DNA of 64,000 bases from Octopus sinensis (GCF_006345805.1 NC_043021.1:15562001-15626000), one strand, 5' to 3'. Positions 1 to 63,995 are shown, numbered from the stretch's first letter. Translations and numbers: made by a program. Notes: generated from the sequence alone by a model not told the origin.

Positions 1-71
1 ATGTCACTAGTAGTGGGGAGGGGGTAGTTAAATTGTAACTGAGATGGAGGTGTCAAACCATACATCTTCAA

Positions 72-106
<35 letters not shown>

Positions 107-395: not shown

Positions 396-550
396 GTATA
401 TATATATATATTATATATATATATATATATATTTTTTTTTTTCTACTTTCTATACAATCCTGGAATCAAACGGCCATGGTGGTTTGATAAGTAAGCACCT
501 TGGCTTTATCTTATCTATCATTGTTATGTCCAGTCTATTATCGTCTAACT

Positions 551-596
<46 letters not shown>

Positions 597-1124
597 CACA
601 CGTGTGTATGTACATATATATCCACGAGTACATACATATGTATATATCATGTATATGCATACACACGCACATACATGCAAACATATGTATATATGCACAC
701 ACACACACACACCACACACACACATATAATAAGCTGTATGTTCTAAACAATAATCTGTTGGTAGCAGTCGTCCGTTTCTTATATCTTCGTGTGAGAGGTT
801 AGCATGTGTTGGGCAGCTGATCTTGACAACACTGCTGAGGTTTAATGCTGTCCTTTCTCCACCCATACCTGGAGGACAAACATCAGCTCCATTATGTGTG
901 TGCAGACGATATTTTCATTGGAATGCTTTACCAACAATATTTCTAAATTGTTGGATACATTCAGTTGTAGCCATGGTAACGTCAGATATTAATTATTCCA
1001 CAAGGGCAATTATTGCGACAGATGGTTTCATACATACATGATTATATATGTACAGACACACAACCACACACATAAATACAAATACAGTGTTGCTTTTCCA
1101 TCATTTCTCATAGAAACATGCTAT

Positions 1125-1545
1125 CTCACTGATCATGTTTTGTAAAAGCATATGATATGCTTGAGAAGACCTGTTGAGTCAAGTAAGACCAATATCGTAG
1201 CTGTGACCAGTGACCCCTGACCGGCTTCCATGCTGGTGACATGTAAAAAGCACCATCCATATGTGGTTGATGCCAGCTCCACTGAACTGGCCCCTGTGCC
1301 AGTGGCACATAAAAAGCACTATCCAAACATGATCAATGTGAGACCCACCTGACTTGCTCCTGTGCCAGTGGCACATAAAAAGCACACACTACACTCTCAG
1401 AGTGGTAGGCGTCAGGAAAGGCATCCATCTGTAGAAACATTGCCAGATCAGATTGGAGCCTGGTGCAGCCTCCTGGCTTGCCAGTCCCCAGTCAAACTGT
1501 CCAACCCATGCCAGCATGGAAAATGGACGTTAAAGGATGATGATT
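1125..1545 (+). mobile_element. RTE-type LINE 3' UTR fragment (family D)
   Basis: Repeated GTGCCAGTGGCACATAAAAAGCAC units and a terminus CCAACCCATGCCAGCATGGAAAATGGACGTTAAAGGATGATG, shared with the ORF-bearing copy at 49015-50110. Confidence 0.75.
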
Positions 1546-1742
1546 GTCCATTTGAATAGGAAAAATCCCACAGAATCTTACATTTCGCCAACCCCAGTAC
1601 CCTTTCAACTCAATGATTACACCATGTGTTTCCAGTTTCTGGCAAAGTTTCTAGCGTAAAACCTTTACCACCTGGTCAAGCTTCCATTTCTTATATTCTT
1701 CCTGTGCCATTATTATATTATTATTATTATTATTATTATTAT

Positions 1743-2295
1743 TGAGTGAGAGAGCAGTTCATGCCATCAAAGTGACACTGGGGTAAAATATACGAAGCCC
1801 AATATACCCATCATGACTACCCGTCTGATAAAGGTACACCAGGCACATGCATCACAACCATATGTGCGCGACATGGTGATCTCATATCAAGATAAACAGC
1901 ACATGACCTTGCAGGTGGGGCCCAGTTAGAATTTTCTTCAGGTTGAGTAGCCCATCCCGCTCAAACGGTCCCTGAATAAGGGTTGCTTAGGATGTTGAAA
2001 GAACCACCCATATTTCCAGAGGTGAACTATTCAAACCCCAAAGAATCCCTCTCAACACATGGCTATGATGCTCCCCCACTACTTCTGCTCGTGATCAGAG
2101 ATGCACATATCGTCAGCCACTAAGGGACATGCTCAACTGGTTAAGGTCAAACAACTGACAAGCAAATCTGTGGTATTGAGCAGAATATTTGCTGTAGCCC
2201 ATCTTTTATACCAAGACAAAACAATGTACATGATAACACTTCCAATCAGTTAAGATCAGAAGCCATGAGAGCCACTGCCTGGTACTGCATCAGGG

Positions 2296-2297
<2 letters not shown>
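1743..2297. mobile_element. 555-bp fixed-end interspersed element in (ATT)n (family C), copy 1
   Basis: TGAGTGAGAGAGCAG...GGTACTGCATCAGGGCA with (ATT)n on both sides; the same ends recur at 37467-38022 and 54328-54860. Confidence 0.85.
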
Positions 2298-2344
<47 letters not shown>

Positions 2345-2359
2345 AATAATGCAGCAGCA

Positions 2360-4730
2360 GCAAGCTGGCAGAATCGTTAGCATGCTGGGCAAAATGCTTA
2401 GCGGCATTCCATCTGTCTGCACTTTCTGAGATCAGATTCTGCTGAGGTCAATTTTGCCTTTCATCCTTTCAGGGTTGATAAATTAAGTACGAGTTGAGTA
2501 CTGGGGGGGTTGATGTAATCAAATTAAACACCTCCCCAAACATTTGAGGCCTTGTGCCTATAGTAGAAAGGATTATGATTATTATTATTATTATTATTAC
2601 TACTACTACTACTAAGTTGGTGTTCTTGCAGAATCATTGGCACACATTTCAAATTGCTTAACAACACTTTGTCCGTCTTTATGTTCTGAGTTCAATCTCT
2701 GCTGAAGTCGAATCTGCCTTTCTTATGTTCAGGCTCAATAAAATAAGTACCAATCGGATGCTGGTGGTGGTGGTGGTGAGGGGGGTGTCAATGTAATTGA
2801 CTTACCCCCTCCCCAAAATTGCTGGCCTTGTGCCAAAATTTGAAAGCATTAGGGATGGCAGAGTAATTCAGCATCTTTGCATGAGGTTTACCCAGAATCA
2901 CCCTAAGTGGACTGCCTTACTATCAGGAGGTTCTAATTATTTACCTATTATTTCCCTAATTTCTGTTATCCCTCTGTTACATCCCTCAATGTGCTTAGTA
3001 TCTCCCTTTGACTAATGCAAACCCCACTTTTTTTTTTGTATTTTTCTTTTGTTTTGTTTTTGTGTGCTGTAACCCGTCCTTCGATATTGTCCTCCATGTC
3101 TTGGGCGCTTGTAGCCTTCAAAAAGAAATCATTATCATTATTGTTTTGGCACACTCAGCAAAATACTTAGTGGTGTTTCGCTTGTCGCTACGTTCTGAGT
3201 TAAATTTCTGCTAAAGTCAACTTTGCCTTTCATCCTTTTGGGGTCAATAAATTAAGTACCAGTGATACACTGTGGTCGATGTTATCAATTCATCCCTTCC
3301 CTCCAAAAATGACTGCCCTTGTGGCAAAATTTGGAACGACTATTATGATTACCTCCACCTTACGTAAGGCGGAGGTATTGTTTTCAGTCGCATTTGTTTG
3401 TTTGACCATTGATAAGGTATCTCAAGAACCGCTGGATGGATTCGGGTGCAACTTTCAGGGATATTTGGCCTCATGACTGACCCAAACTGATCAGATTTTG
3501 GGGCCGATCTGGTACTGGACAAAGATTCTGGATTATTTTTCCTGTTTTTTTTTTTTTTTTTTTTTTTTACTTAATTTTTGAGAGCAGTCGGGTTAATTTT
3601 CAGTATTCTCGTTTGTGAGAGCAGTCAAGTTTATTTCAGATATTCTCATTTTAAAAATCATCTCCGGCTAATCATTGAGAGACGTTGGTGTTGCCTTGGC
3701 GGAGGTTTGCACTCTCTGAGTGTTCTTATTATTAGGTCGAGGTCAACTTTACCTTTCATCCTTTCGGGGTTGATAAAATAAGTACCAGTCTTGTACTGGG
3801 ATCGATGTATCAGCTAATCCCCTTCCCATCAACCTTCAGGCCTTGTGCCTATAGTAGAAAGGTTTATTATTATTTTAGGTGGTGAGCTGGCAGAATCATT
3901 AGTGCACTGGATGAAATGCTTAATGGTATTTCACCCATCCCTACGTTCTGAGTTCAAATCCCACCAAGGTCGACTTTGCCTTTCATCCTTTCGGAGTCGA
4001 TAAATTAAGTACCAGTTACATACAGGGGTCGATATAATCGACTTAATCCGTTCGTCTGTCCTTGTTTGTCCCCTCTTTGTTTAGCCCCTTGTGGGTAGTA
4101 AAGAAATAGGTATTTCGCCCATTGCTACGTTCTGAGTTCAAATCCCACCAAGGTCGACTTTGCCTTTCATCTTTTTGGGATTGATAAAATAAGTACCAGT
4201 GAAACACTGGGGTCAATGTAATCGATTCATCCCCTCCCCCAAAATTGCTGCCCTTGTGGAAAATTTTGAAACCATTATTATTATCATTATTAGCACACTG
4301 GACAAAATGCTTAGCAGCATTTCACCCGTCGCTACATACCGAGTTCAAATTCTCCCGAGGTCAACTTTACCTTTCGTCCTTTCAGGGGTCAATAAATTAA
4401 ATACCAGTGAGATACTGGGGTCGGTGTAATCGACTAGTCTCCCCTTCACAAAAATGGATGCACTTGTGGCAGAATTTGAAACCATTATTAAGGTGTTGAG
4501 CTGGTAGAATCCTTTACAACACCAGGCAAAATGCTTGGCAGCATTTTCACCTGTCTTTCAAATTCTGAGTTCAAATTTTGCCAATGTTTGCCTTTGCCTT
4601 TCATCCTTAAGGGGTCAGTAAAATAATTACCAGTTGAGCACTGGGGTCGATGTAATCAACTAGGTCCCCACCCCCACCCCATCCCAAACTTGCTGGCCTT
4701 GTGCCAAAATTTGAAACCATTATTATTATT
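2360..4730 (+). mobile_element. Head-to-tail array of ~7-8 tRNA-related SINE copies (family B)
   Basis: Recurrent GAGCTGGCAGAATCGTTAGC...TTCTGAGTTCAAAT...GAGGTCGACTTTGCCTTTCATCCTTTCGGGGTCGATAAA.TAAGTACCAGT units separated by (ATT)n; B-box-like GAGTTCAAATYC. Confidence 0.85.
3349..3726 (+). mobile_element. Non-autonomous Helentron/DINE-1-like (HINE) element
   Basis: 5' hairpin ACCTCCACCTTA-CG-TAAGGCGGAGGT (3351-3376), sub-terminal GGCGGAGGT (3698-3706), 3' hairpin CACTC-TCT-GAGTG (3710-3722) and an internal T-tract: the canonical HINE layout. Confidence 0.7.
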
Positions 4731-14599: not shown

Positions 14600-14945
14600 G
14601 AACTTTAGGCCTCACTGAGGAAATGACCAGTGACCGAGACCTTTGGAAATATGCTGTACGTGAGAAGACCAGGCAGGACAAGTGAGCCCAGCCCACTTAT
14701 GCATGCCTTTCCTCCCTTGGACACAAAGACCTGTTGAGGCACCAGCCTCGCCTGGCACCTGTGCGGGTGGCACATAAAAGTACCCACTACACTCACGGAG
14801 TGGTTGGCGTTAGGAAGGGCATCCAGCTGTAGAAACATTGCCAGATAAGACTGGAGCCTGGTGCAGCCTTCTGGCTTCCCAGATCCCCAGTCGAACCGTC
14901 CAACCCATGCTAGCATGGAGAACGGACGTTAAACGATGAACAATT
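14600..14945 (+). mobile_element. RTE-type LINE 3' end (ORF stop plus internally deleted UTR, family D)
   Basis: RTLGLTEEMTSDRDLWKYAVREKTRQDK*, then a shortened UTR ending GGAGAACGGACGTTAAACGATG. Confidence 0.8.
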
Positions 14946-19567: not shown

Positions 19568-19796
19568 ATTTCTTTACTACCCACAAGGGGCTAAACACAG
19601 AAAGGACAAACAAGGACAGACAAACGGATTAAGTCAATTATATCGACCCCAGTGCGTAACTGGTACTTATTTAATCGCCCCCGAAAGGATGAAAGGCAAA
19701 GTCGACCTCGGCGGAATTTGAACTCAGAACGTAGTGACAGACGAAATACCACTAAGCATTTCGCCCAGTGCGCTAACGTTTCTGCCAGCTCGCCGC
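19568..19796 (-). mobile_element. Young family B SINE inserted antisense into an older family B copy (~19445-19865), 17-bp TSD
   Basis: CAGTAAAATAAATACCA at 19551-19567 and 19797-19813. Confidence 0.92.
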
Positions 19797-20314
19797 CAGT
19801 AAAATAAATACCAGTTGAGCACTGGGGTCAATGTAATTGACTTAACCCTCCCCCGAATATTCTGGCCATGTACCAAAATTTGAAGCAACATTCAGGTATG
19901 TGCACCCAAGTTCCAGAATTCTTCATTCGCCTTCTCCAAGCCATATGTGGTGGTGGGAGGGATGACTGCTGGTTTATAATGAACATCACAGGTAATTCAT
20001 ATGGTTTCAGGTTTAAGGTTTGCAGTAGTTTGAAGGGTGCACAGTCTGGAGGTTAAGTCATAAGGTTGTGCTTTCAATTTCCAAACTGAGAGGCACATTG
20101 TGTCCTTGAATAACACACTTTATTTTACTGAAAATTATTACTAGCACAGCTGGGAGGAGTTAACATTGTAATGGACTGCCATCCCATCCAGGGAGAAAGT
20201 ACTGCACTCTGTTAGTTATACACCACAGAAACCAGTTTTAAGCTCAAACCTAATGATCCTGTAGGGTCGTGATAGACGACACCGTGGTGATCTCAGTCTC
20301 GCTCACAGCATCAT

Positions 20315-23609: not shown

Positions 23610-23905
23610 CATCATCATCATCATCGTTTAGCGTCTGCTTTCCATGCTGGCGTGGGTTGGACGGTTCAACTGGGGTCTGGGAAGCCAGGAGGCTGTGCCA
23701 GGCTCCAGTCTGATCTGGCAATGTTTCTACGGCTGGATGCCCTTCCTAACGCCAACCACTCCGTGAGTGTAGTGGGTTCTTTTTACGTGCCACCGGCACG
23801 GGGACCAGACGAAGCTGGCAATGGCCACGGTCGGATGGTGCTTTTTTCGTGCCACCGGCATGGAAGCCAGCCGGGCGGCGCTGGCTATGGCCACGTTCGG
23901 AATTG
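23610..23905 (-). mobile_element. Family D (RTE) 3' UTR fragment joined to a family B half copy
   Basis: (CAT)n-CGTTTAGCGTCTGCTTTCCATGCTGGC... and hairpin units; runs directly into CCGCCGAGGTCGAC. Confidence 0.75.
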
Positions 23906-24317
23906 TTGTTCCGCCGAGGTCGACTTTGCCTTTCATCCTTTTGGGGTCGATTAAATAAGTACCAGTTACGCACTGGGGTCGGTGTTATCAACTTAATCCC
24001 TTTATCTGTCTTTGTTTGTCCCCTCTATTGCATATCATTCTTAATTCTTGCACAAAATTTATTTTTTGTTATCAACATTGCTATAGCCCTTCACTCGCCA
24101 TGCTAAATAGATGGGAGCAACAAAAGGCTCTCCGTGCATTTTCTAGACACACAAGTTGCATTTAGTCAGTTTGTGATTACTTCAAGACTCCATTGGCTTT
24201 TACTTCCTACAGTTTCTCTGGCATTCGCCTTCCTCACCAGTTTGAGAATTTCTCTGTTACAATATTTGATGACAGATGCTATGATATCCATTCCAGAACT
24301 CTACACTGTGTCTTTAA

Positions 24318-26912: not shown

Positions 26913-27261
26913 CCTCTCTCCGTTTTTCTTGCTCCCTCTTTCTCTCTCCATCTTTTTCTCTACCTCTCTCCCTCACATGCACACATTCACCCTTACGTAC
27001 ACCCTCACATATGCAAACCCAATACACACACACACACACTCACGCACACACATTTACTCTCAGTGCACATACAGACGCACATGTACATGCTCATCTACAT
27101 ACACATACACACACCTGTAAAAAGAACTTGGAAGGTTGAGCCTCCAACCAGGCCTTTCACAATGCCCTTAAAGCCAGGCACTTTTCAGCTGCCCCTCATG
27201 CATGTATGTATGTATGTATATATATGTATGTATAATATGTATGTATATATATGTATGTATA

Positions 27262-27492
27262 AGGCGGCGAGCTGGCAGAAACGTTAGCACGCCGGGTGAA
27301 ATGCGTGGCCGTATTTCGTCTGCCGTTACGTTCTGAGTTCAAATTCCGCCGAGGTCAACTTTGCCTTTCATCCTTTCGGGGTCGATAAATTAAGTACCAG
27401 TTGCGCACTGGGGTCAATGTAATCGACTTAATCCCTTTGTCTGTCCTTGTTTGTCCTCTCTGTGTTTAGCCCCTTGTGGGTAGTAAAGAAAT
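27262..27492 (+). mobile_element. Full-length family B SINE
   Basis: AGGCGGCGAGCTGGCAGAAACG...GTAGTAAAGAAAT; candidate 17-bp TSD ATATATATGTATGTATA (27245-61, 27493-509), in low-complexity sequence. Confidence 0.9.
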
Positions 27493-28658
27493 ATATATAT
27501 GTATGTATATACACACATACACACACACGTGCCCAATCACTGATTGGAGGGACAGAATCTCCAGCTTCTATATCGATGTGAAAATTCTTGCACCTTTCTA
27601 TATGTAGCAGAATTTGTAAAGCATTGGACAAAATACCTTCCAGTATTTAGGTATGACCCTTTGTTCTGAGTTCAAATCCCAAGAATAGTGTTGATTACAT
27701 TAACTATAACCTCACCACACACACACACACACACACACATGCACACACACACACACATTTTCTGGTTTTGTGCCAATGTTGAAACTGGATATTTCTAAGT
27801 ATTTTGATCTCCGATGACCTGTGAATACGTCTTGGGCATTTCTCTTGAAAACCCCGTGTTTGGCTGTGATATTTAAAGTAAAAATTTTTATACACTTGAA
27901 ATATCTGAAGTGGTAACATGAATTGGAGTATGAAAATAGCCTGAATGCTTTTCCGCGACCAACATGAAAGCTACGTTTCACACTTTGACGAGGAAGGGAT
28001 ATATGATTCAGAAATAATTCTTTGTTAATTAAGCATGAAAGGCATTAAGCAAGTTAATTGTCTCGAACAGACACTGACTTGCGTAGCACATGACTCCACA
28101 GCGAGATACTAATGCTGCAATGCATAGGGTATCACAGAGTTCAGTACGGTAGGTAGCCAGAAGCTAGTCGGAGATAATTACAGTGAGAACCAATCTAATA
28201 AAGGTCTACTGCTGACCTCATAAAATACAATTCATGCTTGCCAAATTGGTTGCCGCTCATCGGACATCTTGAAAGCATGGCTGTACAGTGTTGGGTTTGT
28301 GTTGTGTTGGTTTCTTCTTCTTCTACGTAATATTTTCCCCACAACTGAAACATGTAAACCAAAAGTGAACGTGTAATCTTCTTGCCTCTCCTGGATTGTT
28401 TGTTACGATACCGCCCACCGCCGTTTGCTAGTAATGGCTACAAAGTCACGTAGTGACTGCAGCGGTGGTGATGGTAGTGGTGGTGGTGGTAGCATACCTG
28501 ATTTATTGATCCTTTAGTTTGAAGTTAATGGAGAGTCTGAACGACTGATTGAATGAAGTCAACTGTAACAGGATATTATTTTCTAAATGTGCCTAAGATA
28601 TATATATATATATATGTGGATATATGTTTGTGTATATATATATATATATATATATATA

Positions 28659-32060: not shown

Positions 32061-32195
32061 ATGAAAATGGAGAAACTTAAGCGAAGCTTAAGCTTCCGCA
32101 AGAAAAAAGATCATGTCCCCGAGTGTTCTAAACCTCATCAATGGCTTGAGGACGAACGTAAAGTTCGGGAAGGGACATGTAGTTTTCAAGTGAAG
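32061..32195 (+). CDS. numb: Numb (PTB-domain endocytic adaptor, Notch antagonist): coding part of the start-codon exon 32048-32195
   Basis: Translates to [45 protein letters not shown], matching the recalled Numb N-terminus (human [42 protein letters not shown]). Acceptor TCTTCTTTTGCAG|G at 32047/48; donor AAG|GTAAGG at 32195/96, phase 0. ATG 32067 (aaaATGg) aligns with human Met1. Confidence 0.96.
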
Positions 32196-33150: not shown

Positions 33151-33649
33151 ATTACATTAAGCATGGACCCCACACACACACAAACATATAAAAGTTGGGG
33201 CAGGGTTGATTAAACCATTAGGGCCTAGTCAAAGCTAGTTCCAAAATAAATTTGATTTGTCTGTTAAGTCCCCTCCTCCCCTTTGCCTTCTCCTTTGCTT
33301 AATATTCTGTTGTTATCCCTAAAGCTATACAATAACAAATAACAACTCGAAATTTAGTGCATATATATATATTATTAATATTTAGCAGAAGTAACTGAGT
33401 GACTCGAGGTTCAAGAGTTTCGTGTGTTGGCATTTCTCAAATTAGTTACAAGTTTAAGACCTGTGGGTTTAGAGAGCTCTTGATAAATATATTCCCTCTG
33501 GATTGTTCGAGATCAGATCATAATAATAAAAAAAAATTGTCACTTGTAGAATTCAAATAGTTTGCCAGCTATGTATATACTTCCATAAGTCTGTATGTGT
33601 ATATATATATATATATTATATATATATATACACACCACACACACATAAG

Positions 33650-33711
<62 letters not shown>

Positions 33712-34074
33712 GTCTATATATATATATATGTATATATATATATTTACATATATATATATTTACATACATATATGTCTATGTGTGTGTGTATATATATATA
33801 TATATATACACACACATATGTCTAAGTATAACTATATATACATATATGTATATATATCATCGTCAACATCGTTTAACGTCCATTTTCCATGCTAGCATGG
33901 GTTGGACGGTTCGACCAGGGTCTGGGGAGCCAGGGGGCTGCACCAGGCCCCAGTCTGATCTGGCAGTGTTTCTACAGCTGGATGCCCTTCCTAACGCCAA
34001 CAACTCCATGAGTGTAGTGGGTGCTTTTTACGTGCAACCGGCACGGACGCCAGTATGTGTGTGTATATATATAT

Positions 34075-34137
34075 ATATACACACACACACAAGTCTATAT
34101 ATATCTGTGTGTGTATATATATCTATATGAGTGTATG

Positions 34138-34172
<35 letters not shown>

Positions 34173-35236
34173 ATGTATCATCATCATCATCATCATCGTT
34201 TAACGTCCGCTATCCATGCTAGCATGGGTTGGACGGTTCAACTGGGGTCTGGCAAGCCCGAAGGCTGCACCAGGCCAGTCAGATCTGGCAGTGTTTCTAC
34301 AGCTGGATGCCCTTCCTAACGCCAACCACTCCGAGAGTGTAGTGGGTGATTTTATGTGCCACCGACACAGGTGCCAGACGAGGCTGGCAGACGGCCACAC
34401 TCGGATGGTGTTTTTTATGTGCCACCGACACAGGTGCCAGACGAGGCTGGCTGACGGCCACGCTCGGATGGTGTTTTCTTATGTGTCACCGACACAGGTG
34501 CCAGACGGGGCTGGCGGACGGCCATGCTCGGATGGTGTTTGTTACGTGCCTCAGCACGGAGGCCAGTCGTTGCGGTACTGGCTACGATCACGTTCGGATG
34601 GTTTTCTTATGTGTCACCGGCACTGGTACCACAAGGATACAAATTCCATTGATGTTCATCTATTTTGATTTGGTTCGATTTGATTTGATTTGATTCGATT
34701 CGATTCTCACTTGCCTCAACAGGTCTTCACAAGTGTCACAAGAAGGAAGGTATGCACAGGTGGACTGACTACGTCCCAGGTAGGGGCCACGGATTATGGC
34801 TTCACTAGTCTTGCCGGGTCTTCTCACGCACAGCATACTTCCATAGGTATATATATATATATATATATATGTAAATGTCTATATATATAGACAGAGAGCG
34901 AGAGAGATGATTTCTTTTAAAATTGCATCTGACGTAATGTGTGGGTATATACAATTAACGCTCAAGTTGATTTACCACCTAATATTTCTCACTGGTTAGA
35001 GCACTTTTTTTTTGTTGATCCGACCTATAACGGAGCAGTAAACTATATATATGTATGTGTATATTTATTATTCTTAAGCAAGAATATTATTGACTGTGAC
35101 TTCAAAGAATAATAAATTGTTTTTGGAATAATAAATTTATACTCTACGAAAGTATAGAGTAACCCATTAGATTAATGTAAAATAGGTTTTATTATAACTA
35201 AATATAAGGAACAAAACATACATACATACGTATATA

Positions 35237-35348: not shown

Positions 35349-36399
35349 ATGTATCATCATCATCATCATCATCGTTTAACGTCCGCTATCCATGCTAGCA
35401 TGGGTTGGACGGTTCAACTGGGGTCTGGCAAGCCCGAAGGCTGCACCAGGCCAGTCAGATCTGGCAGTGTTTCTACAGCTGGATGCCCTTCCTAACGCCA
35501 ACCACTCCGAGAGTGTAGTGGGTGATTTTATGTGCCACCGACACAGGTGCCAGACGAGGCTGGCAGACGGCCACACTCGGATGGTGTTTTTTATGTGCCA
35601 CCGACACAGGTGCCAGACGAGGCTGGCTGACGGCCACGCTCGGATGGTGTTTTCTTATGTGTCACCGACACAGGTGCCAGACGGGGCTGGCGGACGGCCA
35701 TGCTCGGATGGTGTTTGTTACGTGCCCTCAGCACGGAGGCCAGTCGTTGCGGTACTGGCTACGATCACGTTCGGATGGTTTTCTTATGTGCCACCGGCAC
35801 TGGTACCACAAGGATACAAATTCCATTGATGTTCATCTATTTTGATTTGGTTCGATTTGATTTGATTTGATTCGATTCGATTCTCACTTGCCTCAACAGG
35901 TCTTCACAAGTGTCACAAGAAGGAAGGTATGCACAGGTGGACTGACTACGTCCCAGGTAGGGGCCACGGATTATGGCTTCACTAGTCTTGCCGGGTCTTC
36001 TCACGCACAGCATACTTCCATAGGTATATATATATATATGTAAATGTCTATATATATAGACAGAGAGCGAGAGAGATGATTTCTTTTAAAATTGCATCTG
36101 ACGTAATGTGTGGGTATATACAATTAACGCTCAAGTTGATTTACCACCTAATATTTCTCACTGGTTAGAGCACTTTTTTTTTGTTGATCCGACCTATAAC
36201 GGAGCAGTAAACTATATATATGTATGTGTATATTTATTATTCTTAAGCAAGAATATTATTGACTGTGACTTCAAAGAATAATAAATTGTTTTTGGAATAA
36301 TAAATTTATACTCTACGAAAGTATAGAGTAACCCATTAGATTAATGTAAAATAGGTTTTATTATAACTAAATATAAGGAACAAAACATACATACATACG

Positions 36400-49014: not shown

Positions 49015-50110
49015 TATCATCATCATCATCGTTTAGCGTCCGTTTTCCATGCTAGCATGGGTTGGACGGTTCTACTGGGGTCTGTGAAGCCAGAAGGCTT
49101 CATCAGGCCCAGTCAAATCTGGCAGTGTTTCTACGGCTGGATGCCCTTCCTAACGCCAACCACTCCGTGAGTGTAGTGGGTGCTTTTTACGTGCCACCCG
49201 CACTGGTGCCAGACAGAGCTGGCGAACGGCCACGAACGGATGGTGCTTTTTATGTGCCACCGGCACGAGGGCCAGGCGAGGCTGGCAACGGACACGAAAC
49301 GGGGCGGTGCTGGCAACGGTCGCGAAACGGAAAGTTCTCTTACATGCCACCGGCACTGGTAAACATCTGCAATTTCCATTGATCGATTTCCATTGATCGA
49401 TTTCGATTCTGATCGTCACTTGCCTCAACGGGTCTTCACAAGCAGAGTTTTGACATGCCACCGGCACTGGTAGCACATCCGCAATTTCCATTGATCGATT
49501 TCGATTCTGATCCTCACTTGCCTCATCACGTCTTCACAAGTAGAGTTTTGTGTCCCAAGAAGGGAAGGTATGCATACGTAGTCTGGCTCCATCCCATGTA
49601 GAAGGCCACGGGTTATGGACTCACTTGTCCTGCCGGGTCTTCTCGCGCACAGCACACTTCCAGAGGTCTCGGTCTCTAGTCATTTCCTCAGTGAGACCTA
49701 AAGTTCGAAGGTCGTGCTTCACCACCTCGTCCCAGGTTTTCCTGGTCTGCCTCTTCCACAGGTTCCCTCAACGCTAGGGTGTGGCACTTTTTCACACAAC
49801 TATCTTCATCCATTCTCGCCACATGACCATACCAGCGCAAACGTTCTCTTGCACACCACAACTGATGCTTCTTAGGTCCAGCTTTTCTCTCAAGGTACTT
49901 ACACTCTGCCGAGTGTGAGTACCGGCATTACACATCCATCGGAGCATACTGGCTTCATTTCTAGCGAGCTTACGCATATCCTCAGCAGTCACGGCCCATG
50001 TTTCACTGCCATGTAGCATGGCTGTTCATACACACGCATCATACAGTCTGCCTTTCACTCTGTGCGAGAGGCCTTTTGTCACCAGTAGAGGTAAGAGCTC
50101 TCTGAACTTC
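49015..50110 (-). mobile_element. 5'-truncated RTE-type LINE (~1.1 kb), ORF disrupted
   Basis: FRELLPLLVTKGLSHRVKGRLYDACV*TAMLHGSETWAVTAEDMRKLARNEASMLRWMC...KTWDEVVKHDLRTLGLTEEMTRDRDLWKCAVREKTRQDK*, then the family D UTR and a (GAT)n tail; one stop and frameshifts. Confidence 0.88.
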
Positions 50111-55255: not shown

Positions 55256-57561
55256 TATTGTGCTGGTGGCATGTAAAAAGCACCATCCAAACGTGGCTGA
55301 TGCCAGTGCCGCCTTCACTGGCTTCTGTGCCAGTGGCACGTAAAAAGCACCAACCAATCGTGGCTGCTACCAGCCTCCCCTGGCACCTGTGCCGGTGACA
55401 CATAAAAAGCACCCACTACACATGGAGTGGTTGGCGTTAGGAAGGGCATCCAGCTGTAGAAACACTGCCAGATCAGACTGGAGCCTGGTGCAGCCTCCTG
55501 GTTTCCTGACCCCGGTTGAACCGTCCAACCCGTGCTAGCGTGGAAAACGGACGTTAAACGATGATGATGATGATTATGGTAAAATTGGTAGTGTGTCTGC
55601 CAATACACCTTGCAGTGTTTAGTTATGGCTCTCTGTATTCTGAGTTCAAATCCTTCTTAAGTCACCTTTCCTTTGTGACCTTCTGTAGTTGATAAAGTAC
55701 CAGAGAGCAAAGTGTATTAAACTGCTTTGCTCAAGGAAACAGTGCAGCATTGGGTACATGCAGGAATTGAACCTGAAAAGGTATTATCATGAGCCAAACA
55801 CCTTAACCATAAGGCCACACACTTTTACTTTTGTAAACACATAGGAAGACAAAGGTGTAACTGAGTGGTTTAGAAGTTCACTTTTCAACCATGTGGTTTC
55901 AGGTTCAGTCCCACTGTGCAGCACTTTGGACAAGAATCTTCTGCTATAGCCTCAAGCTGACCAAAATCTTGTAAGTGGCTTTCATAGATAGAAACTGAAA
56001 GAAGCCTGTTGTGTATGTGTATGTGTGTGTGTTATCATATGGTGTAATGTAAATGCATTCTCATGCAAGTCAGGGTTGATGAGAAAAAGGGTATCCAATC
56101 AAAGAAAATCTTGTAAGTGGCTTTGGTAGATAGAAACTGAAAGAAGCCTGTTGTGTATGTGTATGTATGTGTGTGTGTGTGTTATCATATGGTGGAATGT
56201 AAATGCATTCTCATGCAAGAGATGTTGTTCATTTCTAGTCTTCTGTAACATCACATGATAGCTGTAAATGAGTGTCACCGGCATACAAGCAGTGTCCTTC
56301 ACTTCCAGTCTTCTGTGGAAAAAAAGCATGTTTGGCCTTGCTTGGAAACAAGTCAGGGTTGATGAGAAAATGGGTATCCAATCATAGAAAATCTGCCTCA
56401 ACAAATTCTGTCTGACCCATGCAGGCATAGAAAAGTGGACATTAGATGATGATGACGACGACGACAACGTAGTAGTAGTAGTTTAGTGGGTATGTGGTCA
56501 CAAAAGAGTTTAATATTAATTATCAATTATCTCTCTCCCTCTCTCCACATGAAGGTTTTGATTCCTAGACTGGGTGATGCACTGTGGTCTTGAGCAAAGC
56601 ACTTCATTTCACATTGGTCCAGTTCACTCGGCTGGCAAAAAAATAATGAGTAACCCTGCAAAAGACTAACCTCCCATGCAGAAGTGGAATAATTCAGTGG
56701 CCCCAGATGAGAAAGACGAAATATACTAATGCTGTATCATTATTAAGAATACCAGAAATGAAATCTCGTTACAAGTAATGTCTCGTTAAAAGATATCGTG
56801 ATAGGATTTTTTTTTTTTCATTTTTGTATCTTACTCTTATCTTTCGAATATTTTATTTTCTTAGAAAAATAAAACCAACAAAATTAGCAAAATTTTTGTT
56901 TGTATTTTTTTTCTTTTTTTGCTAGATGGTGGAGGTGAGGCATTAAATCTTTTTCTTTGTCATTTATTATAGATCTCACTATACATATCTTAACGAATTC
57001 CTTCACCTGTACATATATATATATATTTATATAAATATAAATAAAGTACATTATTTTTACTCTTCTCTGCAGGACACATTTTCATTATTGGTTTTTGACA
57101 GCTGTCATTAAAAGCTATTTGAAACCCCAATCCCATCTCCTGTCTCATTCGCTCTCTTCCCCCCCCCCCCACGCCCACCCCCACATGCAAAATCACCGGT
57201 AAATATTTGAAGTAAAACAAATAAATGGACAAAAGATATGAAAAATATTAATAGATTAAAAGCTGGAAAACCATAAATTCTAAAAATTTATTTCAGTTTT
57301 AGATTTGTTTTATTTGTCTATAATGTATGTGTGTGTGTGTGTGTGTAGGCATGGCAGTTTAGTCACATATTTAAATGTATTCATGTGGATATATATATAT
57401 ATCAAATGATGTGTGTGTTTATATATTTAGTCTAGTTGTGGTTTACCCTTGGCCAGGTCTTGTACATGTTAACCTTCTTCAGCACTCTCAAAACAACCCG
57501 GAAGGACCCATGTGCTACTGGAATTATGGCCATCCATGATGAGAGACTTGGGATTTATACT

Positions 57562-57795
57562 GCGGCGAGCTGGCAGAATCGTTAGCGTGCCGGGCGAAAT
57601 CCTTAGCGGTATATCGTCTGCCGCTACATTCTGAGTTCAAATTCCGCCGAGGTCGACTTTACCTTTCATCCTTTCGGGGTCAATAAATTAAGTACTAGTT
57701 ACGCACTGGGGCCGATATAATCGACTTAATCCGTTTGTCTGTCCTTTGTTTGTCCCCCCTGTGTTTAGCCCCTTGTGGGTAGTAAAGAAATAGGT
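57562..57795 (+). mobile_element. Full-length family B SINE
   Basis: GCGGCGAGCTGGCAGAATCG...GTAGTAAAGAAAT. Confidence 0.9.
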
Positions 57796-59155: not shown

Positions 59156-59872
59156 TTATATAAGATAGTTAGCTGGCAGAGTCGTTAGCATGCTGGGTGA
59201 AATTCTTAGCAGCATTTTGTCCGAGTTCAAATTCTGCTGATGTCGACTTTGCCTTTCATCCTTTCGGGGTCAATAACTTAAGTACCAGTCAAGTAGTGGG
59301 ATTGATATGGTTGACTTTCCCCATGCTCCCTCCCCACCCACTCAAAAATTTCAGGATTATTATTATTATTAGCATAATCATTAGTGTGCTGGGCTAAATG
59401 CTTAGTGGTATTTCATCTGCTGCTACATTCTGAGTCCGAATTTCCGCAGAGGTCAACTTTGCCTTTCATCCTTTCGGGGTTGATTAAGTAAGTACTAGTT
59501 ATGCACTGGGGTTGATGTAATCGACTTAATCCCTTCCCCTAAATTTCAGGCCTTGTGCCTACAGTAGAAAGTATTATTATTATTATTAAGGTGGCAAGCT
59601 AACAGAGTCATTAGCACAGCAGGCAAAATGCTTAGCGGCATTTTGTCAAAGTTGACCTCAGCAGAATTTGAACTCAGGATGTAAAGGCAGACAAAATGCC
59701 GCTAAGCATTTTGCCTGCCTTTACATCCTGAGTTCAAATTCTTCTGAGGTCAACTTTGACTTACATCATTTTGGGGTCAATGAAATGAGTACCCATTGAT
59801 CACTGCAGTTGATGTAACCAACTTACCCTCCTCCCCTGAAATTGCTGGCATTGTGCTAAAATTTGAAACCAC

Positions 59873-60120: not shown

Positions 60121-60495
60121 GAGCTGCCAAACTGGCTCGTGCCAGTGCCACCTAACTCACTGCTGTGACAGTCACACATAAAAGGCATCCAGCCTGTAGA
60201 AACCTTGCCAGATCAGATTGGAACCTGGTGCAGCCTCCTGGCTTTCCAGTCCCCAGTCAAACCGTCCAACTTATGCCAGTATGGAAAGCAGACATTAAAA
60301 AATGATGATGATGATGCAGCGAGCTGGCAGAAACATTAGCACATCTGACAAAATGCTTAGAGGCACTTGTTCCGTCTCCTAGACTAACCCTCTTTCTGAT
60401 TAGTTGGGTTATGGCCTCTCCATAGGCAAAAAATGGTCAGGAACCACTGCTCTACAGTAAGAAATTTGTTCTTCTCTGTTCATCTACTGTTCCTT

Positions 60496-60720
60496 ATTTC
60501 TTTATTGCCCACAAGGGGCTAAACATAGAGGGGATAAACAAGGACAAAAGGATTAAGTCGATTACATCGACCCCAGTGCGTAACTGGTACTTAATTTATC
60601 GACCCCAAAAGGATGAAAGGCAAAGTCGACCTCGGCGGAATTTGAACTCAGAACGTAACGGCAGACGAAATACTGCTCAGCATTTCACCCGGCGTGCTAA
60701 CGTTTCTGTCAGCTCCCTGC
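60496..60720 (-). mobile_element. Full-length family B SINE
   Basis: Reverse complement of the family B unit. Confidence 0.88.
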
Positions 60721-60771
60721 CTTTTTTTTTCTTTTTTTTTTTTTGCTTCTTAATTAGGCTTTATTTTTTTC

Positions 60772-60924
60772 TCTCGACCGGACGGGGCCCTGGGACGATG
60801 GGATCCTAGGGCCGCAATGAGCATTCAAGGTGTCGATGTTCACTGAGTCCTGCAATTCACATCAGTTCATGTGGATAGCCGTGCTCTTCATCAACAGACG
60901 AGCCGAGTGATCCTCTGTCCAGGG
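60772..60924 (-). pseudogene. Near full-length 5.8S rRNA pseudogene
   Basis: Reverse complement CCCTGGACAGAGGATCACTCGGCTCGTCTGTTGATGAAGAGCACGGCTATCCACATGAACTGATGTGAATTGCAGGACTCAGTGAACATCGACACCTTGAATGCTCATTGCGGCC... carries the 5.8S motifs GGATCACTCGGCTC, GATGAAGA and GTGAATTGCAG. No flanking 18S/28S seen. Confidence 0.9.
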
Positions 60925-61270
60925 ATTTGATCCCCCTTCCAGGGATTTGATGCCCCATCCAGGGATCTGATCCCCCGGCTGTTCACTGAGTTCTGCAATT
61001 CACATCAGTTCATGTGGATAGCCGTGCTCTTCATCAACAGACGAGCCGAGTGATCCTCTGTCCAGGGATTTGATCCCCCTTCCAGGGATTTGATGCCCCA
61101 TCCAGGGATCTGATCCCTCGGCTGTTCACTGAGTTCTGCAATTCACATCAGTTCATGCGGATAGCCGTGCTCTTCATCAACAGACGAGCCGAGTGATCCT
61201 CTGTCCAGGGATTTGATCCCCCATCCAGGGATCTGATCCCCCGGCCTGGGATTTGATCCCCTGTCCAGGG
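60838..61270. repeat. 143-bp tandem repeat (x3) made of the 5' half of 5.8S plus ~20-bp TCCAGGGATTTGATCCCCC subrepeats
   Basis: GTTCACTGAG at 60838, 60981 and 61124. Confidence 0.92.
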
Positions 61271-63379
61271 AGATTTACTGTTTCTGTTACACATAAGCAT
61301 ATGACTTTGTATGTTTGTTGGTGTGTTTGTATCTGTGCACACATGCATGTTCGCACACTATGTTTCCTTTCAGGCCACCTGTCACCACCACTACCTTTAC
61401 CTCCACCCCCAGTAATCTACACCACCACCACAACCATCATCATTATCATCATCATCATCATCACCACCAAGGCCCGACATGGAGGTTGCCTCAATGCCAG
61501 CCATTCTATTAATTTAAGCTCTGCATAATTACAAATATACGAATAATTACTGTACCTTTAATTTCATTTCTTATCATTTGCCTACCTTCAAAAAAGGCAA
61601 TTTGGTAAACAGGAAAACCTGTCTTTGAAGATTCTTAACCAGATTTCTCTTAAGAAGTCTCTTGTTTCCATTGATGTAGACAAAGAGAAAACAAGTAAAA
61701 ATGGAAAAAAATGTAAAACAAAGACTTCAATAATTGGTGCCAATAGAAATACAATTCGATGGGATTTATTGATTTTTTTTAAATATTATTTTTTAAACTT
61801 TTTCTCTTTGCTTTTTTTTCTTTGTTTTAGATCAGCCAAATCTAGTTTATTTATTTGATTGTTTATTTATATATATATATATATGTATGTATATTCTTTT
61901 TGTGTGCTAGAAACAAAAACACAAAATGTTGATGTCGATATATCATTCCTGGGCATAACGAACATAAAAGTAAATTTGAAAAGAATTTTCAATCACTTCC
62001 ATATTATCTGTGTGTGTATGTGTATGTACATACATACATATATATATATATACACACACACACACCACACACACACACACACACATACACACACACACAG
62101 ATAGTCCAAAAGGTATTAGCAACATGTGTGTATGTGTGTATATGAGAAAGAGGTGGCTGGCATATATATGTACGCATACACATACGCATATATGAGAGAT
62201 GTATACACATGCACATATATACAAAGGCACAATACATATATACAAGCATATACATGCACACAATACATACATGTACAAAACATTTATATACACACACACA
62301 TACATTATACATGATGCATTCTTAGTCATATATTAAGAGGAACTTGCTACAAATGTTGCTTCTAGCAAATGTTTTACACAAATATCATCATCATTATCAT
62401 CAACATCCTTATTTTTTTAAAAATTTCTATCATCATCATCATCGGTAAGAATAGCATTTTAGATATAAATTCCATACACACGCTCACATAAACGTAACAC
62501 GTTTTGCGTGTTACCAGTTTAAATAGTGTTTCATATACAGTTTTATGGCTGCCACTGTTTTTAAGAACCTACACATTGAAAATAAATTTACTGCTGTCTA
62601 TATATATATATATATAGAAAAATAAACTCCACCTTTTTTTTTTATATCATTTGAAGTTGTATCTCTTTATTTTTAAAAGCATTTCCTTAAAACTGGTGAA
62701 GTGGGGTAGGATAAAAAATATAATAAAAAGACCTTTGGTTATTTATTCATTTCTTATCTGTCCCCATTGTTTCGGATCTTTCTCATCTTCTTTGTTTTAT
62801 GTGATAGATGGGAAAGAGAGAGAGAGAGAGAGAGAGATGAGATCTTTCTAGAATAGTTGCGCTGTTTTGGTTATATATTGGGCATTGGTAACAGTTTGGG
62901 TGGTGGTGGTGGTTGTGTGCTAAGTTGATAATGGATCGATGCATTTAAAAAAAAAATGCTGTGAGGTTAGTAACCTCACAGAATAAATGGCACTCCCCGC
63001 TCTTACTGCTGCCAGCCACCCTATGCCCAAATATGGAATAAATGGACAGCAAGAAATTTTTGAAGTCTTAAAAAAAGAAACTTTCAAATGGTGTTGGGCT
63101 GGAATGGAACAGAATGAAATGCAATGAGGTGGAATCAGATCAAGAAAGAAACATGTGTAGTGATGCATTTCAACTACTGCAGTTGTAGTGAAGCCAGAAC
63201 AAGTTTGAATAAGTTCAAGTTAGTTTTTATAGTAATCATAATATGAAAAGATAGACGTAACTCTTGTACTGTAGAACTAAAAGTAAAGTTTTATGGGAGG
63301 GGGAAGCTTAGTTCCTCTTCAATGGTAGTTAGTTCCTTACTGCCTACAGTTCTATTGTAGTGCCTTTAATTCTATAGTG

Positions 63380-63725
63380 GTATTTGGCCGTTGCCAGCCT
63401 CGCCTGGCCCCCGTGCCGGTGGCACGTAAAAAGGCACCATCCGTTCGTGGCCGTTGCCAGTGCCACCCTGACTGGCCTCGTGCCGGTGGCACGTAAAAAG
63501 CACCATCCGTCCGTGGCTGTTTGCCAGCTCTGTCTGGCACCTGTGCGGGTGGCACGTAAAAAGCACCCACTACACTCACGGAGTGGTTGGCGTTAGGAAG
63601 GGCATCCAGCCGTAGAAACACTGCCAGATCAGACTGGGCCTGATGCAGCCTTCTGGCTTCACAGACCCCAGTTGAACCGTCCAACCCATGCTAGCATGGA
63701 AAGCAGACGCTAAATGATGATGATG
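63380..63725 (+). mobile_element. Family D RTE 3' UTR fragment
   Basis: Three hairpin units; terminus GGAAAGCAGACGCTAAATGATGATGATG. Confidence 0.85.
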
Positions 63726-63764
63726 TATCTGCTATATTATAGTACTACCTTTAGTTCTATATGG

Positions 63765-63995
63765 CAGCGAGCTGGCAGAAACGTTAGCACACCGGTCAAA
63801 ATGCATAGACGTATTTCGTCTGTCGTTACGTTCTGAGTTCAAATTCCGCCGAGGTCGATTTTGCCTTTCATCCTTTCGGGGTCAATAAATAAAGTACCAG
63901 TTTCGCACTGGGGGGTCGATGTAATCGACTTAATCCCTTTGTCTGTCCTTGTTTGTCCCCTCTATGTTTAGCCCCTTGTGGGCAGTAAAGAAATA
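63765..63995 (+). mobile_element. Full-length family B SINE
   Basis: GGCAGCGAGCTGGCAGAAACG...GCAGTAAAGAAAT. Confidence 0.9.

What the first reader, a model, noticed from the sequence alone, without database searches (positions are those of the whole stretch)
60772..61270. Orphan 5.8S rRNA copy whose 5' half has become a tandem repeat with palindromic subrepeats
Seen: a near full-length 5.8S on the minus strand followed by an A-rich run, with no 18S/28S nearby. Upstream of it are two more copies of its 5' ~85 nt in a 143-bp period, each separated by ~20-bp units containing the mini-palindrome GGGAT-ttg-ATCCC that overlap the 5.8S 5' end. Several departures from recalled 5.8S motifs look like CpG decay (CGATG to TGATG, AACG to AATG) and are shared by the copies, while unit 3 keeps one CpG that units 1-2 lack. 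Inference: a retroposed or captured 5.8S that decayed and then amplified; if dispersed copies exist it would be an rRNA-derived repeat family. It is antisense to numb, so the pre-mRNA would carry sequence complementary to 5.8S.
Basis: partly seen in the sequence, partly recalled or inferred. Interest (0 to 1): 0.7.

Follow-up and report, generated by a model that had tools for sequence, protein, structure and literature searches.

The report
Decayed 5.8S rRNA retrocopy, locally amplified
This is a dead, reverse-transcribed copy of 5.8S ribosomal RNA sitting backwards in an intron of the numb gene of a cephalopod; it lost most of its CpG sites and had its front end duplicated in tandem, which is tidy to dissect but an ordinary kind of genomic fossil.

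Summary
Rfam finds one full-length 5.8S on the minus strand (60768-60926, 85.4 bits). TRF finds a 143-bp repeat in three copies, and there are ten 20-bp subunits. No 18S, 28S or ITS sequence occurs anywhere in the 64 kb.

I recovered a canonical cephalopod rDNA unit (L006: 18S-ITS1-5.8S-ITS2-28S) as a reference. Homology to it starts at the first base of 5.8S and stops 3 nt before the model's 3' end, where an A-rich tail begins. Of 14 substitutions, 12 are C>T or G>A at CpG (Fisher p = 1e-6), and 11 of 20 CpGs are lost.

The 20-bp units are not ITS1. They are 5.8S nt 1-19 copied head to tail, and the "mini-palindrome" is simply the junction between two units. Different units carry different decay products of the same CpG, so the 20-bp array formed early. 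The 143-bp duplication is late, because its copies share almost all decays (2 differences in 143 between the two nearest copies).

Best reading: a LINE-mediated processed pseudogene of mature 5.8S rRNA, decayed under gene-body methylation, with local tandem amplification. I found no evidence of a dispersed family, but the source genome could not be searched. It lies antisense in a numb intron. This is a new member of a known kind, of low to moderate interest.

The parts
60771..60928 (-). Full-length 5.8S rRNA pseudogene (5.8S nt 1 to about 3 nt before the 3' end)
   Evidence: RF00002 85.4 bits. 91% identical to the 5.8S of the canonical rDNA unit L006 4092-4248; 12 of 14 substitutions are at CpG.
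60722..60770 (-). A-rich tail: A7 T AAAGCCTAATTAAGAAGC A13 G A9. It contains an AATAAA hexamer 15 nt before the A13 run.
   Evidence: Sequence. No similarity to the ITS2 start of L006/L007 (p 0.98-0.99). The 24-mer is unique in the window.
60980..61071 (-). Partial 5.8S copy 2 (nt 1-91: one 20-bp unit plus 72 nt)
   Evidence: TRF 143-bp period; blastn to L006 4092-4182 at 89%; RF00002 33 bits, below threshold.
61123..61214 (-). Partial 5.8S copy 3 (nt 1-91); keeps one CpG (CCGCATG) that is lost in copies 1 and 2
   Evidence: RF00002 40 bits.
60929..60979 (-). 20-bp unit array between copies 1 and 2 (an 11-nt partial unit plus 2 units)
   Evidence: Units are 16-18/20 identical to 5.8S nt 1-20.
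61072..61122 (-). 20-bp unit array between copies 2 and 3 (an 11-nt partial unit plus 2 units)
61215..61276 (-). 5'-most array of three units (the first is 22 nt). The array begins directly at 5.8S nt 1.
61277..61282 (-). Candidate target-site duplication, left copy (AACAGT)
   Evidence: Identical hexamer abuts the far end of the adjacent SINE (and sequence). Weak: only 6 nt exact, 9/12 when extended.
60486..60491 (-). Candidate target-site duplication, right copy (AACAGT), directly after the SINE end ...GAAATAAGG
60492..60721 (-). Full-length tRNA-derived SINE in the same orientation, abutting the A-rich tail. It is not part of the 5.8S copy but bears on its insertion history.
   Evidence: Alignment with five other full copies defines its ends. 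More than 25 copies or fragments occur in the window. It is 6.4% from the local consensus.
32064..32195 (+). numb coding exon ([45 protein letters not shown]) with an AG acceptor and a GT donor. It sets the host gene's orientation.

Best explanation
This is a processed (RNA-mediated) pseudogene of mature 5.8S rRNA, inserted in antisense orientation into the intron that follows the first coding exon of numb in a coleoid cephalopod.

**Inferred sequence of events**
1. A 5.8S rRNA molecule carrying, or joined to, an A-rich 3' tail was reverse-transcribed into the genome, most likely by a LINE enzyme through target-primed reverse transcription.
2. At insertion or soon after, its first 19-20 nt were copied head to tail at least four times. 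This could be reverse-transcriptase template jumping at the RNA's 5' end, or early replication slippage.
3. The copy sits inside a gene body, which is where cephalopods methylate DNA. It lost 11 of its 20 CpGs by deamination while hardly changing elsewhere.
4. Recently, a 143-bp block (3.5 small units plus 5.8S nt 20-91) was duplicated twice by unequal exchange or slippage.
5. A tRNA-derived SINE lies against the tail. It probably inserted into the tail, but the order of events is unresolved.

The copy cannot function as rRNA, and nothing indicates that it has any function.

**Shown:** identity, boundaries, substitution spectrum, origin of the units, and the relative order of the two amplifications.
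**Inferred:** the enzyme, methylation as the cause of decay, and how the 20-bp array arose.
For: **Identity**
- RF00002 full-length hit at 85.4 bits.

**Boundaries**
- Against the canonical rDNA unit L006 (18S 935-3799, 5.8S 4093-4251, 28S from 4699), and against L007, whose 5.8S is identical, blastn homology is limited to L006 4092-4248.
- Nothing else in the 64 kb matches 18S, ITS1, ITS2 or 28S.
- The flanks show no ITS similarity (p 0.5-0.99; p 0.23-0.95).
- An A-rich tail starts right after ...GTCGAGAG.

**Decay**
- There are 14 substitutions plus one 1-nt insertion. 12 of the 14 are C>T or G>A at CpG nucleotides: 12/40 CpG positions changed against 2/117 non-CpG positions (odds ratio 24.6, p = 1.1e-6).
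- CpG count fell from 20 to 9.
- Rfam marks broken helix pairs, and the score drops from 117 to 85 bits.
- Window CpG observed/expected is 0.47.
- Octopus methylation is concentrated in gene bodies (PMC9476566).

**Origin and timing of the units**
- Ten units are each 16-18/20 identical to 5.8S nt 1-20.
- Unit junctions join nt 19 directly to nt 1. The first unit abuts the flank.
- The units carry TG, CA, AA or intact CG at the same CpG position.

**Late 143-bp duplication**
- Copies 1 and 2 differ at 2 of 143 positions.
- All CpG decays but one are shared by the three copies.

**Single locus**
- There is no other copy in the window.

**Available enzyme**
- L1-Tx1 and other LINEs are recently active in Octopus vulgaris (PMC13282606).
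Against: - No clear target-site duplication. The only candidate is a 6-nt AACAGT, and it works only if the adjacent SINE is counted inside the insertion.
- The tail is not a pure poly(A). It contains TAAAGCCTAATTAAGAAGC between pure A runs, which looks more like a short foreign 3' end or flanking DNA than a mutated A-run.
- 5.8S rRNA is not normally polyadenylated, so the source of the tail has to be assumed: a surveillance-polyadenylated rRNA, or a template switch from a polyadenylated RNA.
- The reference 5.8S comes from another assembly whose organism name the tools did not show. The window's own rDNA was not available.
- The source genome could not be searched, so copy number is unknown.
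Confidence: 0.75

Rival explanations
1. It is one member of a dispersed, lineage-specific retroposon or satellite family derived from 5.8S rRNA, SINE-like with an rRNA-derived head. The shared decays would have been inherited from a master copy rather than acquired in place.
For: - The structure (repeated head, body, A-rich tail) is retroposon-like.
- The 20-bp unit contains GGATCAAATCC, which by my recollection resembles the Pol III box B consensus GGTTCGANNCC (not tested).
- No published 5.8S-derived mobile family turned up, so such a family could simply have been missed.
Against: - It occurs only once in 64 kb, while the neighbouring SINE occurs more than 25 times.
- No exact match to two diagnostic patterns in JGI metagenome contigs, and none to the unit-junction pattern in IMG/VR contigs.
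- No close ORF turned up in the 5.8-billion-protein collection, which does hold cephalopod Logan, ENA and JGI contigs. This negative is weak: the ORFs are short, and the window's own species seems to be absent.
- 5.8S is a Pol I product with no known internal promoter.
Confidence: 0.07
2. It is a DNA-level orphan rDNA fragment, a piece of the rDNA array moved by ectopic recombination or captured during break repair, rather than an RNA-derived copy.
For: Such fragments do exist in cephalopod-type genomes:
- L004: decayed 28S, ITS2 and 5.8S together.
- L008: 5'-truncated 5.8S followed by ITS2.
- L001: 5.8S with ITS flanks but no 28S nearby.
Against: - All of those carry ITS sequence. The window copy has none on either side.
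- Its limits match the mature RNA to within 1 nt at the 5' end and 3 nt at the 3' end.
- It is followed by an A-rich tail.
Confidence: 0.08
3. The 5.8S copy, its tail and the SINE arrived together as one composite insertion. Either the LINE enzyme copied SINE RNA and then switched template to a tailed 5.8S RNA, or a read-through transcript of a 5.8S-plus-SINE locus elsewhere was retrotransposed using the SINE's 3' end.
For: - The only candidate target-site duplication (AACAGT, 61277-61282 and 60486-60491) brackets the whole composite. It does not bracket the 5.8S part alone.
- Both elements have the same orientation, and the SINE is full length and starts exactly at the end of the A-run.
- Non-CpG divergence of the two parts is not distinguishable (2/117; about 8 non-CpG differences in 234 SINE positions).
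Against: - The hexamer match is weak (roughly p of 0.01-0.03 once junction offsets are allowed, my estimate).
- CpG loss is higher in the 5.8S part (11/20) than in the SINE (5/18), which suggests the 5.8S part is older.
- A SINE inserting into an A-rich tail is a common event and explains the same hexamer.
Confidence: 0.1
4. It is an assembly artefact: rDNA reads were misplaced, or the tandem copy number was collapsed or expanded.
For: Short tandem repeats are error-prone in assemblies, and the reads were not available to me.
Against: - The copy differs from functional 5.8S at 15 positions in a mutational pattern typical of long residence outside the rDNA.
- The three repeat copies differ from one another at specific sites.
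- Both junctions run into unique or SINE sequence.
Confidence: 0.03

Closest known systems
Orphan 5.8S rRNA pseudogenes outside the rDNA arrays (human RNA5-8SP genes)
   Same: Isolated, diverged 5.8S copies with no 18S or 28S nearby. The RNA5-8SP2 and RNA5-8SP6 gene names appear in the literature (PMC8954558).
   Different: This one is in a cephalopod. It has boundaries matching the mature RNA plus an A-rich tail, and its 5' end has been amplified into a two-level tandem repeat. I did not examine the structure of the human copies.
LINE-mediated retrocopies of small non-coding RNAs, including chimeric retrocopies made by template switching (for example U6-L1). From my own knowledge, not tested here.
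   Same: A full-length small RNA is copied from its exact 5' end and followed by an A-rich or foreign 3' segment. The AATAAA, 15 nt, A13 layout of the tail fits a short polyadenylated 3' end joined to 5.8S.
   Different: The source is a Pol I-derived rRNA. Target-site duplications are not demonstrable. The foreign 3' segment would be only about 25 nt long.
DNA-level scattered rDNA fragments (human: PMC8954558; cephalopod loci L001, L004 and L008 fetched here)
   Same: rRNA-derived sequence dispersed outside the rDNA arrays and decaying.
   Different: Those fragments carry ITS or neighbouring rRNA sequence. The window copy carries none.
Tandem repeats born from rRNA genes or retroposons (5S-rDNA-derived satellites, minisatellites inside SINEs). 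From my own knowledge.
   Same: A repeat unit built from part of an RNA-gene-derived sequence, with a higher-order structure (20 bp nested within 143 bp).
   Different: Only three large copies at one known locus, so it is at most a nascent minisatellite. I found no published 5.8S-derived satellite or SINE.

Membership tests
Functional 5.8S rRNA gene (Rfam RF00002) | Scores above the family's gathering threshold over the full model | tested here: met
   85.4 bits against 42, model positions 1-154
Functional 5.8S rRNA gene (Rfam RF00002) | Lies between ITS1 and ITS2 inside an 18S-5.8S-28S unit | tested here: not met
   No SSU or LSU hit in the window. No blastn similarity to the 18S, ITS1, ITS2 or 28S of L006/L007.
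Functional 5.8S rRNA gene (Rfam RF00002) | Conserved helices and sequence intact | tested here: not met
   Non-standard pairs are flagged in the Rfam alignment. The score is 85 against 117 bits for true copies. 11 of 20 CpGs are lost.
Processed (retro)pseudogene of a small RNA | Boundaries coincide with the ends of the mature RNA, with no precursor or spacer sequence | tested here: met
   Homology covers L006 4092-4248, against the Rfam 5.8S span of 4093-4251. Flank tests are non-significant.
Processed (retro)pseudogene of a small RNA | A-rich tail at the 3' end | tested here: met
   A7...A13 G A9 directly after the 5.8S end, although interrupted by 19 nt of mixed sequence
Processed (retro)pseudogene of a small RNA | Flanking target-site duplications | tested here: inconclusive
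   Only AACAGT (6 nt), and only if the SINE is counted inside the insertion. No match immediately after the tail.
Processed (retro)pseudogene of a small RNA | A reverse-transcribing LINE able to use tailed RNAs is present in the genome | not testable with these tools
   The source genome was not available. The literature reports active L1-Tx1, CR1, RTE and Dong-R4 LINEs in Octopus vulgaris (PMC13282606).
SINE or dispersed retroposon family with an rRNA-derived head | Many dispersed copies sharing diagnostic substitutions | tested here: inconclusive
   One locus in 64 kb. No matches in JGI metagenomes, IMG/VR or the protein collection. The source genome was not searchable.
SINE or dispersed retroposon family with an rRNA-derived head | Internal Pol III promoter (boxes A and B, or 5S-type) | not tested
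   5.8S is a Pol I product. GGATCAAATCC in the units resembles box B only by my recollection.
SINE or dispersed retroposon family with an rRNA-derived head | LINE-derived 3' tail recognised by a partner LINE | tested here: not met
   The tail is A-rich and unique in the window. The adjacent SINE is a complete separate element with its own head.
DNA-level orphan rDNA fragment | Carries adjoining spacer or neighbouring rRNA sequence | tested here: not met
   Contrast with L004 and L008.
Satellite or minisatellite DNA | Head-to-tail tandem copies | tested here: met
   143 bp in 3.0 copies at 96% matches; 20-bp units in ten copies
Satellite or minisatellite DNA | Long arrays or several genomic loci | tested here: inconclusive
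   Only three large units here, with no other locus in the window. Genome-wide status is unknown.

The most novel reading that the evidence does not exclude
The locus may be the founder, or one member, of a lineage-specific 5.8S-derived retroposon or nascent satellite.

In that reading, the head-to-tail copies of exactly nt 1-19 record the reverse transcriptase jumping end to end onto roughly 20-nt 5'-terminal fragments of 5.8S rRNA during insertion.

The numb pre-mRNA would then carry about 340 nt that are roughly 90% complementary to 5.8S. That stretch could pair with rRNA or feed small-RNA or RNA-editing pathways.
Probability: 0.07. Interest if true: 0.6.

Novelty: new member of a known kind. 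Interest (0 to 1): 0.25.

Why it matters
As it stands this is a genomic fossil with no sign of function. It has three modest uses.

1. **A read-out of germline CpG deamination.** The ancestral sequence is known almost base for base. The copy therefore measures CpG decay inside a cephalopod gene body: 12 CpG changes against 2 others. This fits the published gene-body methylation pattern.
2. **Evidence on retrocopying of rRNA.** It shows that mature Pol I-derived rRNA can be retrocopied in cephalopods.
3. **A small natural record of how a tandem repeat is born.** Units that start exactly at RNA nucleotide 1 hint at reverse-transcriptase template jumping.

It would matter more only if dispersed copies exist. 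I found no description of a 5.8S-derived mobile family or satellite.

Tried and rejected
**Units as the ITS1 end: rejected.** The units match 5.8S nt 1-19, and the flank shows no ITS1 similarity to four references.

**Cuttlefish 5.8S as reference: misleading.** Using L001 made only 12 of 22 differences look CpG-type. Ten of those differences vanish against the closer reference L006/L007, where 12 of 14 are CpG-type, so most of the non-CpG ones were lineage differences. My interim inference that the 5.8S copy is clearly older than the SINE weakened for the same reason. I now call the order unresolved.

**Searches for other copies that found nothing:**
- six-frame ORFs of the element against the protein collection, which returned only true rDNA;
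- exact look-up of two window ORFs spanning the junctions, not on record;
- two pattern scans of JGI metagenome contigs and one of IMG/VR.

**Species identification failed.**
- The numb exon matches only short unnamed ORFs at 79-95% identity.
- The closest contig shares 89% identity in the exon and nothing outside it.
- Accession strings are absent from the literature.

**Target-site duplication search.** Only a hexamer emerged, plus an 8-mer (ACAGAAAC) shared with the SINE head that fits no insertion model.

**RNA folding of either strand.** z-scores of -2.5 to -3, which is uninformative for rRNA-derived, palindrome-rich sequence.

**tRNA scan of the window.** Nothing found.

**Weak miRNA-family hits at 62.0-62.3 kb.** These are TG/TA microsatellite artefacts, all below their thresholds.

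Full report
**1. The observation**

Rfam's 5.8S model (RF00002) matches 60768-60926 on the minus strand over its full length, at 85.4 bits against a gathering score of 42. It is the only gathering-level hit in the 64 kb, so no 18S or 28S is present. Two sub-threshold 5.8S matches lie just upstream on the same strand, at 33 and 40 bits.

TRF reports a 143-bp period with 3.0 copies and 96% matches at 60837-61261, plus 20-bp sub-periods. The 20-mer occurs nine times at up to 3 mismatches, with 0.01 expected. A 34-mer from the 5.8S part occurs three times, with 0 expected.

**2. Getting a proper reference**

No eukaryotic DNA collection was available, so I translated the element in all frames and searched the protein collection. 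This returned ORFs that gene callers had placed over cephalopod rDNA.

A second search used the six frames of a true cuttlefish 5.8S. Two of its hits (P0043, P0044) share the window's lineage-specific residues (GYP, DPIVPGPRPVER). Their contigs are as follows:
- **L006** (NCBI assembly GCA_024449705.1) is a canonical unit: 18S at 935-3799, 5.8S at 4093-4251 (117 bits), 28S from 4699.
- **L007** (a Logan contig) has an identical 5.8S followed by 28S.

**3. What the copy is**

blastn of L006/L007 against the whole window matches only L006 4092-4248, which is 5.8S from its first base to 3 nt before the model's end. It matches once in full and twice for positions 4092-4182. Nothing in the window matches 18S, ITS1, ITS2 or 28S.

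The 60 nt upstream of the array and the tail downstream show no similarity to ITS1 ends or ITS2 starts (p 0.5-0.99; p 0.23-0.95 against cuttlefish and ENA references).

After ...GTCGAGAG the functional sequence continues GCGG. The window instead continues A7 T AAAGCCTAATTAAGAAGC A13 G A9. Mature-RNA boundaries plus an A-rich tail indicate an RNA-mediated copy.

Dispersed rDNA fragments that I met in other cephalopod-type contigs all carry spacer sequence:
- L004: decayed 28S, ITS2 and 5.8S.
- L008: 5'-truncated 5.8S followed by ITS2.
- L001: 5.8S with ITS flanks.

The window copy is a different kind of object.

**4. Decay**

Against L006 the full copy has 14 substitutions and one 1-nt insertion, giving 91% identity.

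| Position class | Changed | Total |
|---|---|---|
| CpG nucleotides | 12 (all C>T or G>A) | 40 |
| Other nucleotides | 2 | 117 |

The odds ratio is 24.6, with Fisher p = 1.1e-6. CpG dinucleotides fall from 20 to 9.

With the more distant cuttlefish reference only 12 of 22 differences looked CpG-type. Ten of those differences are absent against the closer reference, where 12 of 14 are CpG-type; most of the extra non-CpG ones were lineage differences, not decay.

Rfam flags broken pairs in conserved helices, so the copy cannot be functional.

The window's CpG observed/expected ratio is 0.47. In Octopus bimaculoides methylation is concentrated in gene bodies and largely absent from transposons (PMC9476566). 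Decay driven by gene-body methylation is my inference from these facts.

**5. The 20-bp units**

Read on the minus strand in register, there are ten units between 61276 and 60909. Each is 16-18/20 identical to the first 20 nt of cuttlefish 5.8S, AAAACCCTGGACGGGGGATC. L006 has AAACCCTGGACGGGGGATC.

Unit junctions join nt 19 (…GGATC) directly to nt 1 (AAAT…). The first unit abuts the flanking DNA.

At the CpG of GGACGG the units carry several states:
- CA in u1, u4, u7 and u10;
- TG in u3, u5 and u8;
- AA in u6 and u9;
- intact CG in u2.

At least four units must therefore have existed while that CpG was still intact, which means the small array formed at insertion or soon after.

The repeat phase starts exactly at RNA nucleotide 1. 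This is what end-to-end template jumping by a non-LTR reverse transcriptase would give (a property known from R2; my knowledge, not tested). Early slippage is equally possible. All ten units share one extra T (AAATCCC), which either was in the source RNA or arose before the first duplication.

**6. The 143-bp repeat**

Each period consists of 71 nt of units (one 11-nt partial unit plus three full units) and 72 nt of 5.8S (nt 20-91). The break lies after GTGAACA.
- Copies 1 and 2 differ at 2 of 143 positions.
- Copy 3 differs mainly because its unit array is one unit out of register.
- Within the 5.8S part the three copies differ at only two sites. One of these is the CpG kept by copy 3 (CCGCATG against CCACATG).

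All other decays are shared, so this duplication is late.

**7. Surroundings**

*The neighbouring SINE.* Directly after the tail, in the same orientation, lies a complete tRNA-derived SINE at 60721-60492. Its ends are defined by alignment with five other full copies, and one copy (19568-19797) shows a 15-16-nt target-site duplication. The family has more than 25 copies or fragments in the window.

*Candidate target-site duplication.* The only candidate for the 5.8S element is AACAGT. It occupies the last 6 nt before the first unit (61282-61277) and the first 6 nt after the SINE end (60491-60486). This fits either a SINE nested in the tail or a composite insertion. It is weak evidence.

*Relative ages are unresolved:*
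- CpG loss is 11/20 in the 5.8S copy against 5/18 in the SINE.
- Non-CpG change is 2/117 against roughly 8/200.

*Host gene.* A numb coding exon with an AG acceptor and a GT donor lies at 32064-32195 on the + strand. No further numb exon is detectable before 64000 (numb-like hits). The element therefore lies about 28.6 kb into the downstream intron, antisense to numb.

**8. Is it a family?**

- Within the window there is only this locus.
- The junction pattern has no exact match in JGI metagenome or IMG/VR contigs, and the decayed-core pattern has none in JGI metagenome contigs.
- No close ORF exists in the protein collection, although that collection does contain cephalopod contigs.
- These negatives are weak. 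The window's own species seems absent from the collection: the best numb-exon contig is 89% identical in the exon and unalignable outside it.
- Literature searches found human 5.8S pseudogene names and scattered rDNA fragments, but no 5.8S-derived SINE or satellite.

**9. Verdict**

This is an orphan processed pseudogene of 5.8S rRNA with CpG-driven decay and two rounds of local tandem amplification. It is a new example of a known kind. It is neatly informative about mutation and repeat birth, and there is no evidence that it has any function.

Noticed in passing
window 60492-60721 (-); also 27261-27493, 63763-63995, 19568-19797, 57567-57792, 3884-4108, with clusters at 2.3-4.7 kb and 58.9-60.1 kb: An abundant tRNA-derived SINE of about 230 bp. 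Its head is GGCGGCGAGCTGGCAGAAACGTTAGC, it has a box-B-like GTTCAAATTCC, and it ends ...GTAAAGAAATA with no poly(A). The copy at 19568-19797 has a 15-16-nt target-site duplication. Several copies are arranged in tandem or nested clusters.
   Followed up: partly
window 61277-61290 versus 60697-60709 (minus strand): The 5' flank of the 5.8S array (TAACAGAAACAGT) shares the 8-mer ACAGAAAC, 11/13 overall, with positions 13-25 of the adjacent SINE head (TGACAGAAACGTT). Shuffle p is about 0.01. It fits no simple insertion model.
   Followed up: partly
window 60742-60765 (-): The tail contains AATAAA followed 15 nt later by an A13 run. This is the layout of a polyadenylation signal and cleavage site, so the tail may be the last ~25 nt of a polyadenylated RNA joined to 5.8S. 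The 24-mer is unique in the window.
   Followed up: partly
window 34216-34668 and 35392-35829 (+): Two ORFs about 1176 bp apart share identical first ~110 residues ([39 protein letters not shown]...). This indicates a recent segmental or tandem duplication of about 1.2 kb.
   Followed up: no
window 14605-14916, 23652-23954, 33597-34130, 49062-49382, 55315-55608, 60181-60316, 63352-63684 and others: A second interspersed repeat family recurs on both strands. It can be recognised by the ORF motif ...[18 protein letters not shown]....
   Followed up: no
window 62004-62305 and 59650-59750: Sub-threshold Rfam matches to mir-297, mir-466, mir-3149 and similar families fall on TG/TA/AT microsatellites, in both orientations. 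They are composition artefacts, not miRNA genes.
   Followed up: yes
L002 1587-1744 and 2153-2319 (ENA ERZ17090069; same in L003): An rDNA-like contig carries a tandem duplication of about 580 bp. The duplicated block is the 3' two-thirds of 5.8S plus the start of ITS2 (repeat blocks 93-100% identical), and the second 5.8S has a scrambled 5' part. This is another case of partial 5.8S duplication, here at the DNA level.
   Followed up: partly
L001 (Acanthosepion pharaonis CAHIKZ030002123.1) 1443-1560 (-) and 3273-3430 (+): An intact-looking 5.8S (117 bits) has ITS-like flanks. A 5S rRNA gene lies 1.7 kb upstream on the other strand, and no 28S occurs within 3.2 kb downstream. A protein-coding gene model has been annotated over it.
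   Followed up: partly
L004 (A. pharaonis CAHIKZ030000428.1) 1-3662 (-); L008 (ENA ERZ21867824) 4308-4421 (-): These are decayed DNA-level rDNA fragments: 28S, ITS2 and 5.8S with a 10-nt deletion in L004, and a 5'-truncated 5.8S plus ITS2 in L008. They lie inside large contigs. In the cuttlefish assembly some are annotated as 'unnamed protein product'.
   Followed up: partly
L006 935-3799: The 18S rRNA of this cephalopod-type rDNA unit spans 2865 nt against an 1831-position Rfam model, which implies large expansion segments.
   Followed up: no
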